From contig NW_021826633.1 in assembly GCF_006345805.1 (NCBI RefSeq), forward strand, positions 1-12,307: a DNA stretch of 12,307 bases, in the 5' to 3' direction. The position numbers and the translations under genes were made by a program. The stretch is from Octopus sinensis (lineage: Eukaryota). The notes beneath the pieces were generated by a model. The model saw only the letters and a program-made list of their open reading frames with translations. It made no database searches and had not been told where the DNA came from. Numbering within the stretch: the stretch's first letter is position 1; every line of letters starts with the position of its first letter. Positions 1-10,850 of this stretch are shown here, piece by piece.

Positions 1-957
1 ACCTCTTTGCTTATCAAACTTGCCCTTTTCCTTTCCGGAGACATTGAACCAAATCCTGGCCCCATCAAGAAGAACCTATTACGTATCTTGCAGATCAACA
101 TCAATGGGATTGGTCATAAGACTGCTAAACTTTGTTCCTTCCAGGAGAAGCACGACGTGGACTTTGCTTTGGTGCAAGAAACGAAGCTCTCGGCCAAAAA
201 TTGCTTGCCAGATTTCCCTGGTTATTCTTACATCCGTCGGGACAGACCGGGCTCCGTAAATGGGGGTGGTTTACTAACTCTTATCAGAAAATCCATCCCG
301 TTCATTAACTGTACCTCCCAAGCTTACTCGCAAATTGACAACGATCCAGTGATTGAAATGACAGCTATAACTGTCTCTACAGGGTCATCAACCAGGAGAC
401 TCATCAATATGTACGTACCTCCTCACTCGTCATGTCCTCATGGATGGACCCCTTCTATTCAAAACCTCCAGTCCCTCAGGAATGTCATTATTTGTGGTAA
501 TATGAACACAAAGAGCCCGTTATTGCTAAAAAATCAATCTCTCAACTCAAGAGGATTTCTACTATTCGACCAATTTGATGGTTTAGTCATCCTCAACAAT
601 CCCTCATCTCACACCAGAACACCGTCAAGAAAAGGCAACGCAATTTCCTCTCCTGACATCTCGCTGTGTACTCCAATTCTGGCCCCTGTTACTTATTGGA
701 AGGTCATTTAACACCTAAATTCTGATCACAACCCGATTATTATTATTGAGAATGCCCTAAAATCCAACATCGACATTCAACGCCGTAGTTATATGAATTA
801 CAAAAAAGCTTCCTGGGACGACTACCGTCTTGCTCTAGAAAAATCACTGAATGATTTCGACATTATCAACTTTCGTTCGACTAACGCAGCAGTCAATTAT
901 TTAAATGCACTTCCTTCGCTCCGCAAAAAATTTGTCATTCACCCGGAGGTCCTATAA
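1..957 (+). pseudogene. APE endonuclease / start of ORF of a non-LTR retrotransposon, probably Ingi/Vingi-like; disrupted
   Basis: Frame open from base 1: LRILQININGI, VQETKL, GGGLLTLIRK, NMYVPP, GNMN (normally GDxN), SSPDISL; in-frame TAA at 709-711 followed in the same frame by HLNSDHNP and NYKKASWDDY; next stop 955-957. No RT follows. Confidence 0.9.
31..63 (+). other. 2A-like ribosomal StopGo motif LSGDIEPNPG/P
   Basis: Exact match to D(V/I)ExNPGP, preceded by a hydrophobic run (LLIKLALFLSG), immediately N-terminal to the APE domain. Confidence 0.8.
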
Positions 958-1068: not shown

Positions 1069-1258
1069 TTTCCAAGTTCAATATGGGAATTTCCAAATTC
1101 AATATGGGATTTCCAAGTTCAAAGTGGGATTTTCCAAATTCAATATGGGATTTCCAAGTTCAAAGTGGGATTTTCCAAATTCAATATGGGATTTCCAAGT
1201 TCAAAGTGGGATTTTCCAAATTCAATATGGGATTTTCAAGTTCAAGGATTTTCAAGTC
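1069..1258. repeat. Tandem array of 20/21-bp units with 41-bp higher-order periodicity
   Basis: 8 full units plus 2 partial; alternating (t)tttccaaattcaatatggga and tttccaagttcaaagtggga from 1090 to 1232; no spacers. Confidence 0.97.
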
Positions 1259-2033: not shown

Positions 2034-3034
2034 TATTTATATTTTCCTTTCAAATCTTATATATATTTCCTTTTTCTTTTTTGATTTTTTTAATTCTCAC
2101 AGTCTATCTTGTTTTATTTTTGACACTCGTTGTTAATTTATTTTCTCGGAAATCTCCTATTCTTATGTATTTAGCCAAAACTTGTGCAATAATTAACCAT
2201 ATAGACTCTATAGTAAACTATGAGGTCTTTAGTGTCCAATTTAGATTTTTGCTGTTTTACCGGAATTTCTATAATCCCATTGTTGTTCCATCAGAAAAGA
2301 GTAATTCTTGCAAGAATTCCTAAATTCGCTAGTTTTTGTGTGGCTCCTATACTCTGTGAGCTGATCAACTTTGTACAAACTGGCACTTTTTTCATGCGTT
2401 TTTCCTGGGTATCTTTTCGACCCTGGGCACAAGAATAGCCTTATAGGATGGAAAGCTTGCTTTTCAAAAGTGGAAAATCGTATGTTTGGAACGCAATCTA
2501 GACAGATATCTACGCTGTTCCCCTCGGCATTAAAATTGCCGTGCATGAACGATTTTGTTAAAGATCAAGAATGGAACTCCATCAAGACCTATGACTGTCG
2601 CAACAGCAACAAGGTATTCCAAAGGATGTCATTTTTTATCCTTCGAGGTAATTAAATCCCTTCCATAGCTGCTTTATAACAAAAACTAGCACATTGAAAA
2701 AACCAGAGGCCCGTAAGTGATTAGGATTTCGCTTACGTCAGCCACAGAATTTTTCAAGATTAAGAGGTTTTTTTTGTCTTGCAAGTTTTCTTTTTATTGT
2801 AGTGCGGCTGTTTCGACGATAGATAAACTATTTATATGGATTAATTCCCAACATATGCGAGTTAGTTTACTTTTTTAATTTGTTTGGTTTCGAATTTTTT
2901 GTTAATCTTCAAATCCTAGTAGCAAACGTTGGACAAAACATTGTAGTTCTTTACTGTGAGCGACTGATTATTAAAAAAAATATAATTAATACAGTTATAC
3001 ATAATAAAATAATTCACTTAAATATTTAGTTGTA

Positions 3035-3562
3035 ATGGCAATTAAACTGTTGCTCCTATTCAATCGGCAAGGCCGTATACGCCTACAGAAATGGTACGGA
3101 GCGTACTCGGATTTTGAGAAACTAAACTAAAAAAGAATTTGATTTCTCTGATACTTAAGTCGAACCCGGATTGGAATTTTGCAACTATTAATGACTACAA
3201 ACTAGCATTCAAACGGTTTTGTCTGGATTACTGAATGGCAGATATGGCAGCCTATATTTTGCAACAATTAATGACGCAGAGGACAATGAAATGCTAATTT
3301 TGGACATCATTCACAGATACGTGGAAATACTCGATAAATTCTTTGGATCAGTTGCTTACTTATTTATTATTCTAGGTATGCGAAATAGACATGATCTATA
3401 ATCTCCACAAGCACATTATCTCTTAGACGAGTATATTCTGGCGGGTCAGGTTCACAATTCGTCCGTTAGGGATGTTATTGAACGTGTTTTCTCGGCAAGA
3501 CGAGTTAATGGAAGTGATTTACTGTTCTTAAGATTTAGGATGATGTTTTCAAATATTTGTAA
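3035..3562 (+). CDS. AP1S1: AP-1 adaptor complex sigma subunit (4 exons: 3035-3215, 3242-3350, 3376-3513, 3539-3562); contains 3 single-base frameshifts as assembled
   Basis: Reconstructed: MAIKLLLLFNRQGRIRLQKWYGAYSDFEK/TKLKKNLISLILKSNPDWNFATINDYKLAFKR|YGSLYFATINDAEDNEMLILDIIHRYVEILDKFFGS|VCEIDMIYNLHK/AHYLLDEYILAGQVHNSSVRDVIERV/SRQDELME|DDVFKYL* (/ = frameshift, | = intron). LLF.RQG.RLQKWY and HRYVE.LDK.FGSVCE point to AP-1 sigma rather than AP-2/3/4 sigma. The symbol denotes the family, not the paralog. Confidence 0.88.
3216..3241 (+). other. Spliceosomal micro-intron, 26 nt, phase 2
   Basis: GT..AG (gttttgtctggattactgaatggcag); removal restores the conserved KR-YxSLYF. Confidence 0.9.
3351..3375 (+). 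other. Spliceosomal micro-intron, 25 nt, phase 0
   Basis: GT..AG (gttgcttacttatttattattctag); removal restores FGS-VCE. Confidence 0.9.
3514..3538 (+). other. Spliceosomal micro-intron, 25 nt, phase 0
   Basis: GT..AG (gtgatttactgttcttaagatttag); gives a 138-nt preceding exon and a short last exon DDVFKYL*. Protein conservation is weak here. Confidence 0.7.
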
Positions 3563-3650: not shown

Positions 3651-4360
3651 CAGTCCGACCTTGAATTGGAACACTAAGTGTTCCAAAAACTGAGGTTTTG
3701 TCAAAAAATTAATATCAATATAAATTAATAATTTAATTAATGCAAAAAAGTCTTAAATATTATTATTTATTGAAAATAGTCATCGATCCTTTTTCCATAA
3801 CCATAATTTTTCTTCAAACTACTGAACAAATTTTGTCTGAAACAGTACAAATCATTTAACAAAATTGGAGCTATGTCTAGAACTGATTCTTCCAATTCAT
3901 TCACTTTGGTACTACTTCTTTGACCGTAGTCTGTTTATTTGCATACCACTGTAAAAAATTTCTTCATTATCGCTGCTTTCCGTATTTTCCAACACTTCGT
4001 CTACAACTTGTTCTATAACATCATCCGTCAGATATCAGAAACAACAAATATTTCATTGCCGAAAGTATTATCCCAACAATTTGTATTATTTCGGAGGATA
4101 CATTTTGCCACGATTTCGATACTATTATCAATGATTGGCGTAATTAATTTTTTTAAGTAAGTCGCAGTAAAAATCTTCTTCATCTATACAACAAATAATT
4201 CAATTAACGCCTTCGAATAATTATCTTTAAAAGCTTGATTATCCCATTATCCAATGGTTGAAGAATTGGAGTTGTATTTTTGGGTAAAAACAGCAATTCG
4301 ATATTTGAGAGCGATTTATTTTCATGACACAAAGCGTTATCAAGAATTATTAAAATTTTT
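3651..4360 (-). mobile_element. 3' part of a pogo/Tigger-like DNA transposon (DDE_1 transposase remnant 3767-4360 plus probable right TIR starting at 3651)
   Basis: Minus strand KILIILDNALCHENKSLSNIELLFLPKNTTPILQPLDNGIIK, SKSWQNVSSEII(Q)NCW, acidic tail, KRIDDYFQ* (stop 3767-3769), several frameshifts; plus strand TA then CAGT at 3649-3654, followed by a 21-nt palindrome at 3666-3686. Confidence 0.88.
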
Positions 4361-5429
4361 CACCGTCAGCTCCTCCAGGAAGATAGCGTCTTGCGGGTCC
4401 CAACACCGCTTTAGTTTACTTCCAAGTTCCTTTTTCACGAAGTAGTTGGATTGCTCTTCATTATCAATCGATTTTTGTACGAGAAGAGAACCTCTTTTTT
4501 CCATAGTCCTCCAGATAACTTCGAATAATGTTCCTCATTCTTTCATCCAAATAATTGATCTCGTCAAGATTTAGTATTCAATTCTGAGTATTTGCCAATT
4601 TCATTGACATATAAAAGTGAAAATGATTCCAATTAATGTTGCTGATATATGTCGCGAGCGCAGCGCGCGACCGAGCGCTAGACGCGACTTTATCAGCTAA
4701 CAAGCGGTCATCAACAAACTATATTTATTAATTATTTAAAATTTAACATGATTTAAAATTAAAATTGAAATAACTTAAGTTTTCCATTGAATCCTATAAA
4801 TAATTAGAAGTAGAACTTAATAGAAAAAGTAAAATCAATGAATACTGAACGCTAATTGGTTTAGGTTGTGAGGGGGGAATAATTTGACAGATCCATTGCT
4901 ATTTTTCGTTTTAATCTCTAAAATTAGGTCTTCTAATCAAAAATGAACTGTGCAGACAGGCTTTGCTCCTTCAGAAGATTCTGTTTTGACATTTTAATAA
5001 CTTAGGAAAGCATTTAGATTTTTTCTCATGATTTAAAATATCAATTATAATTTTAAAATATTATTTTATTTTATGAAATTAGCGTTTTAAAGCTATTCTG
5101 CTTGGCATCGATTTTAATTTTTGTTATCGAATATATTAAAACCAAATACCAGCCCGTTGTATTTGTCAATTTATAGATTGTGATGATTCGGATCTAGAAA
5201 ATTGAGTGGTCGCTCGCTGCGCTCGGTCGCTCGCTGCGCTCGCGACATATTATAACCAAGAAATACATCCTCAGTGAGAAATGCTCCCGTTCGTAGTTTC
5301 ATCGTTTGCGGAAGATGGTCACTCCCAACATCACACAAAACCACTTAAGGCATTTGCCAAGGAATATCAATCGAAGCTGTATCCAGAATAGTGATACTTC
5401 CAGACAAAATCAATCTTCTATACATGATC
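4361..5429 (-). pseudogene. Older non-LTR element (LINE B): APE C-terminus and linker, split by the MITE; probably continues at 11462-11520
   Basis: 5309-5332 encodes DVGSDHLP; after removing the MITE it reads on to NINWNHF...LDEINYLDERMRNII...GSKLKRCWDPQDAIFLEELTVK, which aligns by eye with EKKLRRCSDPIDRIRLRDKIRTVK at 12078-12152. Confidence 0.75.
4651..5246. mobile_element. Non-autonomous TIR element (MITE), 596 bp, ATAT target-site duplication
   Basis: 28-bp TIRs 4651-4678 and 5219-5246 (27/28 identical), built from a 17-bp unit; ATAT at 4647-4650 and 5247-5250; AT-rich interior with no ORF; excision restores LINE B continuity. Confidence 0.9.
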
Positions 5430-6698
5430 GCGGGAAGGAAGGAAAAAAGGAAGGAAAAATTTTATTTTAAAATAAAAGGCTGTTAGTGAGGGTATAATTA
5501 AGATCTTCGGCATTTCTGCCTTTTCAGTCCCGCACACACGCTCGCCTCTCAGCCGCAAACTAAGACTTACCGTCTTACCTGCCACCCAGACATTGTCTTT
5601 TCTAAGACCTCAGGGAGGCCATTGAGGACAATTCCTGGGTGTCCGTGAGCTCCACTCGCCATCCTAAGCCATGGGCTAGCCGGATGGCTCGTCTTCTGAC
5701 TTTCTTGAGCGCGTCAACGTACTTCTCTCGGTCCTCACAGAAGTGCCAGGCATGTACACCATAGGTCAACACGGTAAAACCATGGCGTTAAACACACGTA
5801 GCCAAGCACCTCTCCGCAGCCGGAAAGCACGCAACGCGCCTAATCGCTGCATTGCACGCATTTTCGTACGTGCAATGTGATCATCAAACTTACCGGACGG
5901 CTTAAAGAGCACGCCCAAATAAGTCATCCGATCAACTGCAGCAATTGCTGACCCGTTCAGCAATAACCTAGGAGCGTAATTAGTGTAACCCCTCGTCCTT
6001 TTACAGACTTTGAGAACACTGCACTTATCCGCACGCATCTTTAGACCCCTACTCCCACACCAGTTTACAAGTCCATCTACAGCAACCTGTAGCCTACGAC
6101 ACGCACACTCAGGTTTCATCGAGTGATCCCAGAGGATGATGTCGTCTGCACAAATTACAATTTCAGTACGAGCATTGACTGGCATGGGCGCAGATGCCAT
6201 AAAGACATTAAAAAGCGTGGGACTCAGCACAGAGCCCTGAGGGACCCCGCGAAGGACTGTTCTGACTTTAGAAAAGACCCCCTGATGCCGCACGACCTGT
6301 CCGCGAGATTCAAGGAACCCCGACAGCCAGCGCCTTAGACACGGAGAAACCCCACACGTGCGAGGGAGCTCCGGAGGCCGTCGTGCCACACCGAGTCGAA
6401 GGCCTTTTCGATGTCAAGACTAACTAGCATACCGCATTCCTTCTTCTGGAGGGCGCACTTCATCTCAGAAGACACCTTCCATAAGCAGTCTCCACACGAA
6501 CGACCCTCCCTGAAGCCCCATTGGAACTCAGGAGGGCATCAACCACCGTCAGCTCTCCAGGAGCATTCGGTGCATGATGATCCTTTCTAAAATTTTAGAT
6601 ACAGTGGGAAGCAAGGAAATAGGTCTGTATCCCCCGGGGACATCATGAGGCATCCTGGGTTTTCCGATAAGGATTACCTCAGCCACTTCCATCTAGAG

Positions 6699-8128
6699 CA
6701 GGCCTGGCCAACCCAAATCGCATCGCGGGCCACTTTGTCCAAATGAATCCTTTCCGCGGGCCGCATATACATGTACATACTAGGATAGATATCAAAACAA
6801 CACAGATAAGATTTATTTAGTAAAATAGCATTCAGTCCCAATTATACGTATCAATGAGATCTTTTTTCTTTATCTTCACTTAATTTTTTCAAATCAACTC
6901 ACAATTACTAGTTGCACATCTTAATTGGTTTTCTAAGTTTTTATCTGTTAAAGAAGATCTATATCTACTTTTCTAAACTTTAATTTCGAAAAGAATGATT
7001 CACATACGTAAGTAGATCCAAAGGAGCTTACAACTCTTTGTGCAAAATTTAAGTTGGGATTATTTTTCTGCAGTCACATATTTGTTATAAAGTCAATTTG
7101 GATATAGTAGGATAAACAAGTCTTAGTTCACTGTTGCACTGTAGGTCAATTATTTCCGTCTGCAAAGTATTTGAAACACATAGAAACGTCCACATGAAAT
7201 GGAGAAGAAAATGTTTCAAACATTTTCTCATATTTTTTTAGTTCCGAGAATCGACTGTCAAATGCTGCAGCAAGATTTTTTATTTCATCAGCGTACTTGA
7301 AGAAAGTTTTACAATGGCTGATTTTAATTGATTTAGCGTGGAAAATGTTGATCATTTCCATTTCTTATTTGACATTCAAACAATGACAATTTTATTCGAA
7401 TGCTTTGACTTGATGCATGCATTAGTAATCAAATTATCCTGTCCTTGTAACTCCTTGTTTATTGATTAATTTTTTCGGTTATATCTACCAAAAAGCACAG
7501 ATCTAGCATCCATTCTTCATCATTTAATTCAGTTAATGTCATTTTCTTATGCATCATAAAAACTTTTGATTTCTTCTCTCAAGTCGAAAAAACGTTTTAA
7601 ACATTTTCCGCGACTCAGCCATCTGACATTGGAAAAATACACAAGATCACCATAGTGAGAATATAACTCGTTCAATAATTCTTTAAACTGGCGATGTTGA
7701 AGTGCATGAGAACGAATGAAGTTTATAGTTCTCTTACAACACACACTCATAACATGGTTCATAGACAACACTTGCGCGCACAAATTGTGTTGATGTATCA
7801 AGCAGTGTATTACAATAAATCATTTTTTATGCTTTGACTCCATCTCATCCATTATTAGCTTTACAACTCCTTTATTTCTTCCAATCATAGCCGGCGCCCA
7901 TCTGTTGTCAATCCAGCAAGGTCTCTAAATTCGCTCAAAAATTTTCCTTTTCTTCATATTGATAACAGCTACAAAAATAGATAAACTTTAAATAATTTAT
8001 TAAACTTATAAAATTTATTTATTTATAAACTTAAGAAAATTTATCTTGAATGTATTTATAGGTTAACTACATACAAAATTTCTCTCGCGGGCCGCATGCG
8101 GCCCGCGGGCCTTGGGTTGGCCAGCCTG
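6699..8128 (-). mobile_element. Internally deleted hAT transposon (Buster/Charlie/SPIN-like), 1430 bp
   Basis: TIRs caggcctggccaaccc (6699-6714) and gggttggccagcctg (8114-8128, one G missing); exact 8-bp TSD atctagag (6691-6698, 8129-8136); subterminal cgcgggcc motifs; 22-bp perfect palindrome 8086-8107. Confidence 0.96.
6851..7957 (-). pseudogene. hAT transposase remnant (GTF2IRD2/EPM2AIP1/SPIN-like)
   Basis: MKKRKI start fused by a deletion to LAGLTTDG/PAMIG, HCLIHQHNLC, VRWLSRGKCLKRF, WMLDLCFLVDITEK, FGSTYVCESFFSKLK, SSLTDKNLENQLRC, ending SH* at 6851; many frameshifts. Confidence 0.93.
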
Positions 8129-9592
8129 ATCTAGAGGGAATCATCCCAAGTCGCAGCTCCCGCTAAACAAGACCTGTAGGGCGGTGATCAACAACGGCGG
8201 GGCCTTCTTAAAGAGGGCCATAGGGATCCGATCCAGACCCCCGCAGTGTTCTTACTTCGGGAGATCGCTGCCAGATCTCCGCTTCGGAATATCGCCTGCA
8301 TCGTTCCTTGATATTGCCCAGCTGGCAGCGCTTGTCCCACGACAATATCTGCTGGACAGTATCAAAGGACGATGTCTCCACGAACTGGCTTCCGTCAGTT
8401 CCAGAGATGTTATCGAGTGGGTCGAAATATTTCAGCCACCTCAACCGGGTCCGAAACGAGGGTTCCATCAGAGCGTTTAAGGCGCACTGAATTTGCTACC
8501 CTCTCCCCGACAGGCTCTTCAACTGTTTCCAGAAGTCCGGAAGCGGGCGTCTACGCGTCTGCAGGCTCGCTCCCACCGTGAACTTTCAAGTTCGCGGATT
8601 TCTCTTCTGATCTCCCTCTGAAGCCGGCTAATTCAGCCACGAAACCAAACACGGTTTTCCTCGTAAACGCATTTGTCCCGTAGTCTGGATAGCCGGCGCT
8701 TAAACTTAATTTTATTTAAGACCCGGTATGGCAGCGTGGAACCCTGCACTGAGTTCTGTTTGAAATTATCTCGCATATAATCAGTCAGGGCAGCATTGAT
8801 TCCATTATCTAACGCCTCCAACTCACGTATATTGGCACAGGTATTCCCCACCAGAAGTGAGGGCAACCTGCTGGCCATGAACCTCTCCAGGTTGGCCCAA
8901 GAACCCGACCGGAGGTCGAAGTATCCCGGAACCCTTTGAGGACTGGCTCGCGGAGTTCGTGCAATAGAGGCAGATGGTCGCTTCCAATATCGGGCAATAA
9001 AATTGTTTTACTAACCCAATTAGCATTCCAGGACTGACCAGAGCAAGCCCTAGCCAGTCTAGTCCGCCTCGCGAATCGATGTGGTTTGGCTCACTTGAAG
9101 TCCGGATTTCCAACCCGAGGTCTTCAACCAGCGTCTTCAGAGCTAAACCATGCGCGTTGGTTACCCTGAAACCAAGCTCTATGTGCTTGGAATTCAGGTC
9201 TCCAACAACCATCGCCTTCGGATGCTTTCCAAAGAACTCCCGTACGTGCCAGGAACACGCCGTAAAGTTCTTCGAATACATCGCCCCTAGGTAAAATGTA
9301 AGGTTACCTATACAAATCCTTACTTGAAGGAATTCGCATAGGCTACAAGAACATAAACCTGAACTTTGCAAGGTGAGGTACGGCTTGTAGAAGAGGCTAG
9401 TTCCCGTGCCACATATTGATCCCTGTTTCCAGGGTATGTGACAACAGTTGTAGCCATTAACTACGTACGGACCCCCCTTTACCTTCGTTTCGTTGACCAC
9501 CAGAATGTCCGCACTCGTGGTTGCCAACATCCTCTGAACGGCGTCTCCTTTACCGGACAAGGAGCGCGCGTTCACCGATATAATGTTGAGCA

Positions 9593-10850
9593 TCATATCG
9601 GTTCCTCGCCAAGGATCTTCTTGGCCTCAGCCATGTTGCAATGTAGCATATCTGCTACACTGCACTTCGTCGCCCTACATAATTTTAGTAGGCGCAACAC
9701 AACTGCACCTTAGGACTAATGGTGTCCTGGGGAGCACGCTCGCCAGGGGGGGAGTGCGGTGGCATTTCCACGTATGGAGGACGCCTTTTCCACCCGAGGT
9801 TTTGCTGGGCGGTATCAACTGTAGCCCACTCGGAAGGCTTAGCACGCTTCGGCATCCGAACTGACTCGGATGTTATTAGCGGCTCAGTCGACTTTGTCGG
9901 CGAAGGTGGTACCGACCCGCTCGCAATGTGGCTTGCAGGCTTCACAGGCCTCGCCACCGAAGCAGTCTTGGGTGGTTTGGACAGCTTTGCCCGCCTGCCG
10001 GTTGTGGCCCAGGAGCTGCGACGCTAGCCGCGCGACTTACCTTCGAGATTACACCCGCACCTACCTTTCGGGTTGCCTCCTTGAACTTGGGGCAACCTTT
10101 GAAGTTGGCACTGTGTCCTAACTTACCACAGTTGACACAGTACCTCTTCGTAGGTGGCGAGGGGCATGCCTTGCGACCATGGTCCCCACCGCAGGTCAGG
10201 CACTTCGCCTTCTCAGGACACCTCGTGCTTATGTGCCCGAAACCCTGACACCGAAAGCATTGAATGGCTTTCGGACGGGGCCGGACAGCACGGAGCCTAA
10301 CGTAGCCGACCCTCGTACCCAGCAGTATGAGGCGCTCGGCTTCCGCAGGAGATCCCAACGTGACCTCCACCACTTCAAGAGGCCGGTAGCCTTGCTTGAA
10401 GCGTGCAATAACAGAGGTGCTGAGGTATTCCCGCTGCAGGTGCTCTAAAAGGTCGTTATCCTCGAAGTCCCGGGGGACCCCTAGGAGGAGGACTCTTACC
10501 TGCCCTACCTTGCGTTCGAACCTGACAAGCCGATTCATGCCACAGGTGGGAAAGACCTCTAGTCGTGCTACCACGCCGAAGGTAATTCTACCCCCGGCGC
10601 GGGCTGTCTTCCTCTGGTGTGCATCCACCTCTGGAGACGGGTTAGCAGTACCTAAACTGTTAGAGACCGGACGGCAAGCGACACGTTTAGGTTTCCCCAC
10701 GGTACGCCAGCCGTCCTCACCGGTTACCTGAATATGTTAAACATCGCCTCCTGTTCGATTTTTGTTGATTAGCATCTTCCGAGATCGTTTTGCACCATTC
10801 TTTTCTCCTTTAGTATTGTTGCTTTTTTGTACCACAGGAAACAACACCAT
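9593..10850 (-). pseudogene. LINE A ORF1 (Gag-like nucleic-acid-binding protein)
   Basis: RRM-like region followed by CFRCQGFGHISTRC, CLTCGGDHGRKAC, CVNCGKLGHSANFKGC (10092-10259); P/S-rich C-terminus reached via frameshifts; upstream ATG at 10850 is in frame but separated by TAA at 10737-10739; the true start is uncertain. Confidence 0.88.

What the first reader, a model, noticed from the sequence alone, without database searches (positions are those of the whole stretch)
3035..3562. Host gene with three 25-26-nt introns at the same positions as human AP1S genes
Seen: introns of 26, 25 and 25 nt, internal exons of 109 and 138 nt, weak 5' sites (GTTTTG, GTTGCT, GTGATT), a shared TTACT in all three (3228, 3356, 3519), and none a multiple of 3. 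From memory, human AP1S1/AP1S2 have 109- and 138-nt internal exons with the same KR|Y and FGx|VCE junctions. Inference: ancestral intron positions were kept but shrunk to near-minimal size, as described for dicyemids and plausible for myxozoans or similar reduced parasites. Extreme intron compaction next to a TE-saturated neighbourhood is an odd combination and suggests a specialised spliceosome or intron-definition mode.
Basis: partly seen in the sequence, partly recalled or inferred. Interest (0 to 1): 0.75.

Follow-up and report, generated by a model that had tools for sequence, protein, structure and literature searches.

The report
AP-1 sigma gene with tiny introns

Summary
The coordinates, intron lengths (26/25/25 nt), exon lengths (109/138 nt), GT..AG ends and TTACT positions are all as stated. 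I tested the intron positions directly. A mammalian AP1S2 (gerbil) and a tapeworm AP1S have coding exons of 179/109/138 nt, with introns at the same three sites and phases as here.

Only after repair does the gene give a full AP-1 sigma protein (Pfam 141 bits; 1e-42 to AP1S1). Intron 3 depends on one of these repairs.

The source is most likely a dicyemid. The window's GC-rich LINE is 86% identical to a contig in the Octopus sinensis assembly, and that contig carries a DYRK gene with five 23-26-nt introns. The contig's own two frame breaks are absent from a 99.4%-identical sister contig, which points to consensus errors rather than pseudogenes.

Ultrashort introns at conserved positions, divergent proteins and about 49% repeats are all published for Dicyema. 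TTACT as a branch motif is not supported: its chance probability is 0.03-0.13, its position is inconsistent, and only 1 of 5 independent introns has it. Verdict: real, well read, already known, low interest.

The parts
3035..3215 (+). AP-1 sigma exon 1 (181 nt, from ATG). It ends in phase 2 inside the Arg codon of FK[R]Y.
   Evidence: the orthologous boundary in gerbil and tapeworm is
3118..3127 (+). Frame break 1. One base is missing somewhere in GAAACTAAAC. The interval is bounded by TGA at 3115 in the downstream frame and TAA at 3128 in the ATG frame.
   Evidence: the repaired protein aligns without a gap
3216..3241 (+). Intron 1, 26 nt, GTTTTG...CAG, phase 2
3242..3350 (+). Exon 2, 109 nt (YGSLYF...KFFGS), the same length as in gerbil AP1S2 and tapeworm AP1S
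3351..3375 (+). Intron 2, 25 nt, GTTGCT...TAG, phase 0 (FGS|VCE)
3376..3513 (+). Exon 3, 138 nt, the same length as in gerbil and tapeworm. It contains two compensating frame breaks.
3402..3423 (+). Frame break 2. One base is missing, most simply at cacaa[g]gcacat, between YNLHK and AHYLLDE.
3483..3495 (+). Frame break 3. There is one base too many, most simply in the TTTT of CGTGTTTTCTCGG. It is placed by homology only; stop codons allow 3427-3513.
3514..3538 (+). Intron 3, 25 nt, GTGATT...TAG, phase 0 (LME|DD, matching mammalian LQE|). It is probable, but it depends on break 3.
3539..3562 (+). Exon 4: DDVFKYL plus the TAA stop
1..954 (+). Neighbour: non-LTR retrotransposon endonuclease region, preceded by a 2A-like GDIEPNPGP motif
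3770..4720 (-). Neighbour: decayed pogo/Tigger-like DDE transposase remnants (DDE_1 hit at 4207-4359)
5501..10736 (-). Neighbour: GC-rich (54%) LINE with a gag-like CCHC ORF at 9945-10736, endonuclease at 8826-9626 and RT at 5769-6538. It is 86% identical to a copy in O. sinensis contig VCDQ01012037.1. It is split by a 1,432-bp hAT-like insertion at 6699-8130, which has the 8-bp duplication ATCTAGAG.

Best explanation
The locus is the AP-1 clathrin-adaptor sigma-1 (AP1S) gene of a dicyemid-type animal genome. The most likely source is a Dicyema species living in Octopus sinensis, sequenced either on purpose or as a passenger in an octopus assembly.

The gene keeps the three ancient bilaterian AP1S coding introns: phase 2 in the Arg of ..KR|Y.., phase 0 at FGS|VCE, and phase 0 after ..L(Q/M)E. 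Each has been reduced to 25-26 nt.

These introns are most likely removed by ordinary GT-AG (U2-type) splicing working by intron definition near its lower size limit. The signals are only GT, AG and probably an A a few bases upstream of the 3' end. This step is inferred from the literature, not shown here.

The three one-base frame breaks in the exons are most likely consensus indel errors of a long-read assembly, not biology (about 0.7). The TE-packed surroundings are the normal state of this genome.
For: Gene identity: the repaired and spliced product matches Clat_adaptor_s over 2-140 of 142 positions (141 bits). Its best solved-structure match is AP-1 sigma-1A (1e-42), ahead of sigma-2 (2.5e-28), sigma-3 and sigma-4.

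Intron positions: they are identical in site and phase to gerbil AP1S2 and tapeworm AP1S, both with exons of 179/109/138 nt. Splicing raises the Pfam score from 76 to 141 bits.

Lineage:
- The best homologues are only about 50% identical, a very long branch.
- The RT of the neighbouring LINE is 93% identical at protein level to a single protein annotated in O. sinensis; every other hit is 39% or less.
- The two LINE copies are 86% identical at DNA level.
- That contig carries a DYRK2/4-like gene with five GT..AG introns of 23/26/24/24/25 nt. After splicing it aligns end to end with human DYRK2 (3e-112). Its closest non-self homologues are only 51-55% identical.
- Published Dicyema features match: introns of 26.2 +/- 1.9 nt at conserved positions and fast-evolving proteins (PMC2222250); median intron 27 nt (PMC6543705); GC 36.7%, 48.9% repeats, host O. 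sinensis and partly PacBio sequencing (PMC6736024).

Frame breaks as errors:
- The repaired CDS has no premature stop in 150 codons. Simulation gives P(no stop) of 0.04-0.24 if 24-57 neutral substitutions had accompanied three real indels.
- In the related contig L001, both DYRK frame breaks are single missing bases. Both bases are present, and the frame intact, in the 99.4%-identical sister contig L006.
- NCBI flags the L006 gene model as LOW QUALITY PROTEIN.
Against: - There are no transcript data, so splicing is inferred, not shown.
- Intron 3 needs a frame repair, and its extra support is small: 2.7 bits in Pfam and 6.6 bits against AP1S1.
- The organism is never named directly. The link runs through a LINE family and a contig labelled as octopus.
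- Neither the window nor any orthologue of this AP1S was found in the protein collections.
- Errors are not uniform along the window. The LINE endonuclease region at 1-954 runs 954 nt without a frameshift, whereas the 452-nt AP1S coding sequence has three. A real, recently inactivated copy therefore cannot be excluded.
- Break 2 is not in a long homopolymer.
Confidence: 0.8

Rival explanations
1. The frame breaks are real. This would be a recently inactivated AP1S copy (a DNA-level duplicate or a gene being lost) decaying among transposons in a dicyemid genome. The tiny introns would then be fossils of a once-spliced gene.
For: There are three indels in 452 nt of coding sequence. The setting is TE-dense. 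The single-base indel density is similar to that between the decayed LINE copy here and the near-intact copy in L001: 20 in 3.6 kb, of which 17 are bases missing from the window. The LINE endonuclease region at 1-954 has no frameshift, which argues against a uniformly noisy sequence.
Against: The repaired frame has no nonsense codon (P 0.04-0.24 under neutral decay). The domain is conserved over its full length. The sister case resolves as contig-specific missing bases. AP1S is normally a single, essential gene (general knowledge).
Confidence: 0.22
2. The DNA really lies in the octopus genome. Dicyemid genes such as AP1S and DYRK, and their transposons, would have been transferred from parasite to host and be decaying there.
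For: The only close relatives found are in contigs deposited as Octopus sinensis. Frame-breaking mutations are seen in one copy of each of the two genes examined.
Against: The LINE RT query found one annotated octopus protein only and nothing in other cephalopod proteomes. An octopus-resident, recently active LINE should give many hits. Two 98.5-99%-identical versions of the DYRK region exist as separate unplaced contigs of 202 kb and 50 kb, and they differ in their transposon insertions. That looks like haplotypes of a passenger genome. One DYRK copy is intact.
Confidence: 0.04
3. The source is another lineage with ultrashort introns: a myxobolid myxozoan, a ciliate such as Paramecium, or a nucleomorph.
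For: Myxobolids have median introns of 22-27 nt with reduced splice signals (PMC13644364). Paramecium introns average 25 nt (cited in PMC2222250).
Against: The link is to an octopus sample. The gene ends in TAA and the repaired CDS has no in-frame TAA or TAG, so it does not use a ciliate genetic code. LINE, hAT, Tc1 and pogo elements surround the gene. The top homologues of the partner DYRK gene include spiralians.
Confidence: 0.03
4. These are not introns. The three GT..AG segments would be chance features in a degraded, frameshifted gene copy.
For: The sequence does contain frameshifts that are not introns.
Against: All three segments sit exactly at the orthologous intron sites and phases of a mammal and a tapeworm, and they reproduce the 109- and 138-nt exons. 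Their removal adds 65 bits. The related contig has five more of the same size.
Confidence: 0.01

Closest known systems
Ultrashort spliceosomal introns of dicyemids (Dicyema acuticephalum, D. japonicum, Dicyema sp.; PMC2222250, Ogino et al. 2010 as cited in PMC6543705, PMC6736024)
   Same: Introns of about 23-27 nt with a narrow size range and GT-AG ends. They sit at evolutionarily conserved positions in highly divergent proteins, within an AT-rich genome that is about half repeats, in an octopus host.
   Different: Nothing substantive. This is one more gene showing the genome-wide pattern. Here the exons also carry three one-base frame breaks.
Ultrashort introns of myxobolid myxozoans (Henneguya, Thelohanellus, Myxobolus; PMC13644364)
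   Same: Median intron of 22-27 nt at conserved positions. The 5' site is reduced to GT(a) and the 3' site to AG, with only weak A residues as a branch signal.
   Different: These are cnidarian parasites of fish and annelids. There is no link to an octopus sample, and the origin of the short introns is convergent.
Mammalian AP1S2 and tapeworm AP1S gene structure
   Same: Three coding introns at the same sites and phases, with internal exons of 109 and 138 nt.
   Different: The introns are 1.1-5.1 kb in gerbil and 32 nt, 771 nt and 12 kb in the tapeworm, against 25-26 nt here. Protein identity to this gene is only 45-50%.
Paramecium and other ciliate tiny introns
   Same: Mean length of about 25 nt.
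   Different: Ciliates reassign TAA/TAG and, as far as I recall, have a strong GTA 5' site. This gene uses TAA as its stop, and none of its three 5' sites starts GTA.

Membership tests
AP-1 complex sigma subunit (Pfam Clat_adaptor_s, sigma-1 orthology group) | Full-length match to the small-chain adaptor domain | tested here: met
   141 bits against a cut-off of 22.5, covering profile positions 2-140 of 142, after splicing and three one-base repairs
AP-1 complex sigma subunit (Pfam Clat_adaptor_s, sigma-1 orthology group) | Closer to sigma-1 than to sigma-2, sigma-3, sigma-4 or COPI zeta | tested here: met
   AP1S1 scores 149 bits and AP1S3 138 bits, against AP2S1 102, AP4S1 90, AP3S1 85 and zeta-COP 25
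AP-1 complex sigma subunit (Pfam Clat_adaptor_s, sigma-1 orthology group) | Uninterrupted reading frame after splicing | tested here: not met
   There are three single-base frame breaks at 3118-3127, 3402-3423 and about 3483-3495. Whether they are real cannot be decided without reads.
Dicyemid-type ultrashort spliceosomal introns | Length of about 20-30 nt with GT..AG ends | tested here: met
   26, 25 and 25 nt, all GT..AG
Dicyemid-type ultrashort spliceosomal introns | Located at intron positions conserved in other bilaterians | tested here: met
   All three share site and phase with gerbil AP1S2 and Anoplocephala AP1S. The tunicate Styela differs.
Dicyemid-type ultrashort spliceosomal introns | Removal restores frame and homology | tested here: met
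   Pfam gives 76 bits unspliced and 141 bits spliced. Intron 3 alone adds 2.7 bits in Pfam and 6.6 bits against AP1S1, and it needs a repair.
Dicyemid-type ultrashort spliceosomal introns | Actually spliced from transcripts | not testable with these tools
   No RNA data are reachable.
Dicyemid-type ultrashort spliceosomal introns | Source organism is a dicyemid | tested here: inconclusive
   The evidence is indirect but consistent. The LINE is 86% identical to an O. sinensis-assembly contig whose DYRK gene has five 23-26-nt introns. No sequence labelled as dicyemid was available for comparison.
TTACT as a conserved branch-point motif | Enriched beyond chance, at a fixed position, and recurring in independent introns | tested here: not met
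   P is 0.13 or 0.026 depending on the null model. The A of TTACT lies 11, 17 and 17 nt from the 3' end. Only 1 of 5 DYRK introns has it. Published logos show only weak A residues (PMC13644364).
Ciliate tiny introns | TAA/TAG read as sense codons | tested here: not met
   The repaired CDS has no internal TAA or TAG and ends at TAA.

The most novel reading that the evidence does not exclude
The contigs labelled Octopus sinensis, and this window, are not contamination. They would be dicyemid DNA (genes with 23-26-nt introns plus GC-rich LINEs) integrated into the cephalopod germline. That would be parasite-to-host transfer between two animals, with AP1S and one DYRK copy caught while decaying.
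Probability: 0.04. Interest if true: 0.7.

Novelty: already known. Interest (0 to 1): 0.15.

Why it matters
As an intron finding it adds one well-documented example to a published genome-wide pattern, so it matters little on its own.

Two practical points follow.
- Contigs in the public Octopus sinensis assembly look like dicyemid passenger DNA. At least one RefSeq gene model there reads through tiny introns.
- Single-base consensus errors in such contigs can make intact genes look like pseudogenes. Any survey of gene loss in these parasites must allow for this.

If the breaks in this gene were real, they would indicate loss or duplication of an AP-1 subunit in an animal said to depend heavily on endocytosis.

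Tried and rejected
- Looked for the source record or an orthologue. A full-length search found nothing above 51% identity. An exon-2 search of the 1.84-billion-protein representative library found nothing above 69%. Exact look-ups of two window ORFs found nothing.
- P0044, a partial 63% hit, turned out to be an ordinary AP1S from an unrelated eukaryote.
- Tried to confirm the human exon boundaries from AP1S2 mutation nomenclature in papers. The notation is not in the searchable text. I replaced this with direct exact spliced mapping of gerbil, tapeworm and tunicate loci.
- Rfam scans for snRNAs or other RNAs in the window and in L001/L006 found none.
- Programmed -1 frameshifting at break 1 was considered and rejected by reading the sequence. 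No X_XXY_YYZ heptamer lies in frame before the TAA at 3128.
- A model without break 3 and intron 3 (read-through C-terminus FSARRVNGSDLL...) was considered. It scores 2.7 bits lower in Pfam and 6.6 bits lower against AP1S1, and it loses the 138-nt exon match. It is less likely but not excluded.
- The rule 'never a multiple of 3' was rejected. Two of the five DYRK introns are 24 nt and stop-free.

Full report
**What is in the sequence.**
The window is AT-rich (about 32-36% GC) with GC-rich blocks. From the ATG at 3035, the three reading frames hold successive pieces of a clathrin-adaptor small chain.
- 3216-3241, GTTTTG...CAG, 26 nt
- 3351-3375, GTTGCT...TAG, 25 nt
- 3514-3538, GTGATT...TAG, 25 nt

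The exons are 181, 109, 138 and 24 nt. TTACT occurs at 3228, 3356 and 3519.

Joining the exons does not give an open frame. The frame slips by one base within exon 1 and twice within exon 3. Stop codons in the competing frames confine the first break to 3118-3127 and the second to 3402-3423. The third is placed by homology at about 3483-3495. The simplest repairs are one added base at each of the first two sites and one T removed from a TTTT run at the third.

The repaired product is 150 residues. It matches Pfam Clat_adaptor_s over almost the whole profile (141 bits). Among solved structures it is closest to AP-1 sigma-1A (1e-42), well ahead of the sigma subunits of AP-2, AP-3 and AP-4.

**Are the intron positions ancestral?**
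I fetched the genomic loci of three AP1S homologues. I then mapped each annotated protein onto its locus with an exact spliced mapper.

| Species | Coding exons (nt) | Intron positions |
|---|---|---|
| Gerbil AP1S2 | 179/109/138 | after nt 179 (phase 2, in the Arg of YK[R]Y); after nt 288 (phase 0, FGS\|VCE); after nt 426 (phase 0, LLQE\|) |
| Tapeworm Anoplocephala | 179/109/138 | the same three; one of them is only 32 nt |
| Tunicate Styela | different | different positions |

The window gene has its three gaps at exactly those sites and phases, and it reproduces the 109- and 138-nt exons. Splicing raises the Pfam score from 76 to 141 bits.

Introns 1 and 2 are therefore secure. Intron 3 is probable. 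It sits at the orthologous site and gives the 138-nt exon, but it needs the third frame repair. The alternative read-through C-terminus costs only 2.7 bits in Pfam and 6.6 bits against AP1S1.

**Whose genome is it?**
The best AP1S homologues in 5.8 billion proteins are only about 50% identical. An exon-2 search of 1.84 billion representatives found nothing closer than generic AP sigma proteins. This is a very long branch.

The neighbourhood is made of transposons:
- an endonuclease-bearing LINE fragment at 1-954
- a Tc1-like HTH remnant at about 1419-1604
- pogo-like DDE remnants at 3770-4720 (minus strand)
- a GC-rich LINE on the minus strand from about 10736 to 5501

The RT of that LINE is 93% identical to a single protein annotated in Octopus sinensis. 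Every other hit is 39% or less.

The encoding contig is VCDQ01012037.1 (202 kb; L001). It aligns colinearly with the two halves of the window's LINE at 86% DNA identity. That contig also carries a DYRK2/4-like kinase gene interrupted by five GT..AG segments of 23, 26, 24, 24 and 25 nt. Once these are removed, the product aligns end to end with human DYRK2 (3e-112). Its closest homologues outside these contigs are only 51-55% identical.

An octopus-derived sample with 23-26-nt introns, very divergent proteins and abundant LINEs is what the literature describes for dicyemids, the kidney parasites of cephalopods:
- Introns of 26.2 +/- 1.9 nt at conserved positions, and accelerated protein evolution (PMC2222250).
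- Median intron of 27 nt (PMC6543705).
- D. japonicum from O. sinensis has a 67.5-Mb genome at 36.7% GC with 48.9% repeats and many LINE ORF2 copies, and was assembled partly from PacBio reads (PMC6736024).

A 2026 survey finds comparably short introns in animals only in myxobolid myxozoans and D. japonicum (PMC13644364). The octopus link favours the dicyemid. No sequence labelled as dicyemid was available, so the assignment stays indirect.

**The frame breaks.**
There are two readings: consensus errors, or a pseudogene.

For errors:
- The repaired frame has no premature stop in 150 codons of AT-rich sequence. A simulation of neutral substitutions gives this a probability of 0.04-0.24 if 24-57 substitutions had accompanied three real indels.
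- The DYRK gene of L001 has two single-base frame breaks of the same kind. The same O. sinensis assembly holds a second, 99.4%-identical copy on contig VCDQ01000405.1 (L006). At both sites L006 has one more base and an intact frame.
- Over that 1.46 kb the two contigs differ by six substitutions and three one-base indels. That ratio is too rich in indels for natural polymorphism.
- NCBI labels the L006 model a LOW QUALITY PROTEIN.

For a real pseudogene:
- The window is not uniformly noisy. The LINE endonuclease region at 1-954 runs 954 nt without a frameshift.
- Relative to L001, the window's LINE copy lacks 17 single bases and has 3 extra, and these are clustered. That is equally consistent with decay.

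I put errors at about 0.7 and a real, recent pseudogene at about 0.2-0.25.

**How it most likely works.**
What is shown: position, phase, GT..AG ends and restoration of homology. What is inferred: removal by the ordinary major spliceosome, recognising the whole 25-nt unit.

The 5' sites are weak (none starts GTA), and there is no room for a polypyrimidine tract. [quoted passage not shown]

- A 5-mer shared by all three introns arises in 13% of interior shuffles and in 2.6% of triples of random GT..AG 25/26-mers from the AT-rich remainder of the window.
- The A of TTACT lies at intron position 15, 8 and 8. At position 8 it would leave a very small lariat loop.
- In the independent DYRK set, only 1 of 5 introns has the motif.

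Avoidance of lengths divisible by three is also not general. Two DYRK introns are 24 nt and stop-free.

**Comparison and novelty.**
This works like, and almost certainly is, a dicyemid ultrashort-intron gene. Nothing here suggests a specialised spliceosome. No snRNA genes lie in the 53 kb examined.

I rate it as already known and of low interest. The residual exotic reading is that the octopus-labelled contigs are true integrations of parasite DNA in the host genome. I give that about 4%.

Noticed in passing
L001 (O. sinensis GCA_006345805.1 VCDQ01012037.1, 170454-191230) and L006 (VCDQ01000405.1, 1-19884): Two unplaced contigs of the public Octopus sinensis assembly look like dicyemid passenger DNA. 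They carry a DYRK gene with 23-26-nt introns and only 51-55% identity to any other animal's. The RefSeq model (P0240, 'LOW QUALITY PROTEIN DYRK4-like') translates straight through three of the tiny introns.
   Followed up: partly
L001 vs L006: The two contigs are 98.5-99% identical but differ structurally. The 4.6-kb LINE (L001 6113-10694) is missing from the aligned part of L006. The stretch of L001 with a mariner-like element (about 14698-16197) is replaced by about 470 nt in L006. L001 1-1852 matches L006 18030-19882, so the order differs. These look like haplotypes or strains with polymorphic transposon insertions.
   Followed up: partly
L001 about 6230-6330 (+), in the ORF1 frame of the LINE (6113-7312): The open frame that continues into the gag-like ORF1 of the LINE begins MARTKQTARKSTGAKVPRKQL, almost the N-terminal tail of histone H3. 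Pfam finds no domain in the ORF. The window's LINE copy shows no such motif.
   Followed up: partly
window 34-60 (+): A 2A-like 'ribosome-skipping' motif, GDIEPNPGP, lies directly upstream of the endonuclease domain of the LINE fragment at 1-954.
   Followed up: no
window 6699-8130: A 1,432-bp AT-rich (33% GC) element is nested in the GC-rich (54%) LINE. It has an 8-bp target duplication (ATCTAGAG) and terminal inverted repeats (CAGGC(C)TGGCCAACCCAA). A remnant peptide matches the hAT dimerisation region of the hAT element in L001 (62% over 21 aa). The L001 LINE copy is uninterrupted at this point.
   Followed up: yes
window 4647-4678 and 5219-5250: A pair of 32-nt GC-rich inverted repeats, 97% complementary and 540 nt apart, in AT-rich DNA. 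This looks like a MITE-like element of about 600 bp.
   Followed up: no
window 1069-1245: A tandem array of a 41-nt unit (two 20/21-nt half-units), 4.3 copies at 97% identity, between the LINE fragment and the Tc1-like remnant.
   Followed up: no
window 5501-10736 vs the rest: The LINE family is 52-58% GC in a genome background of about 32% GC, an unusually strong compositional contrast. Only one annotated protein in the 5.8-billion-protein collection is close to its RT.
   Followed up: partly
L005 (Anoplocephala perfoliata AP1S locus) 718-749: The tapeworm orthologue has a 32-nt intron at the same phase-2 site as the 26-nt intron here, next to introns of 771 nt and 12 kb.
   Followed up: no
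window 2993-3034: An AG lies 5 nt upstream of the ATG (..aatatttag|ttgtaATG), with a GT about 36 nt further up. Human AP1S2 has an intron ending immediately before its ATG (the c.1-1 splice-acceptor variant described in PMC6422709). A small 5'-UTR intron is therefore possible here.
   Followed up: no
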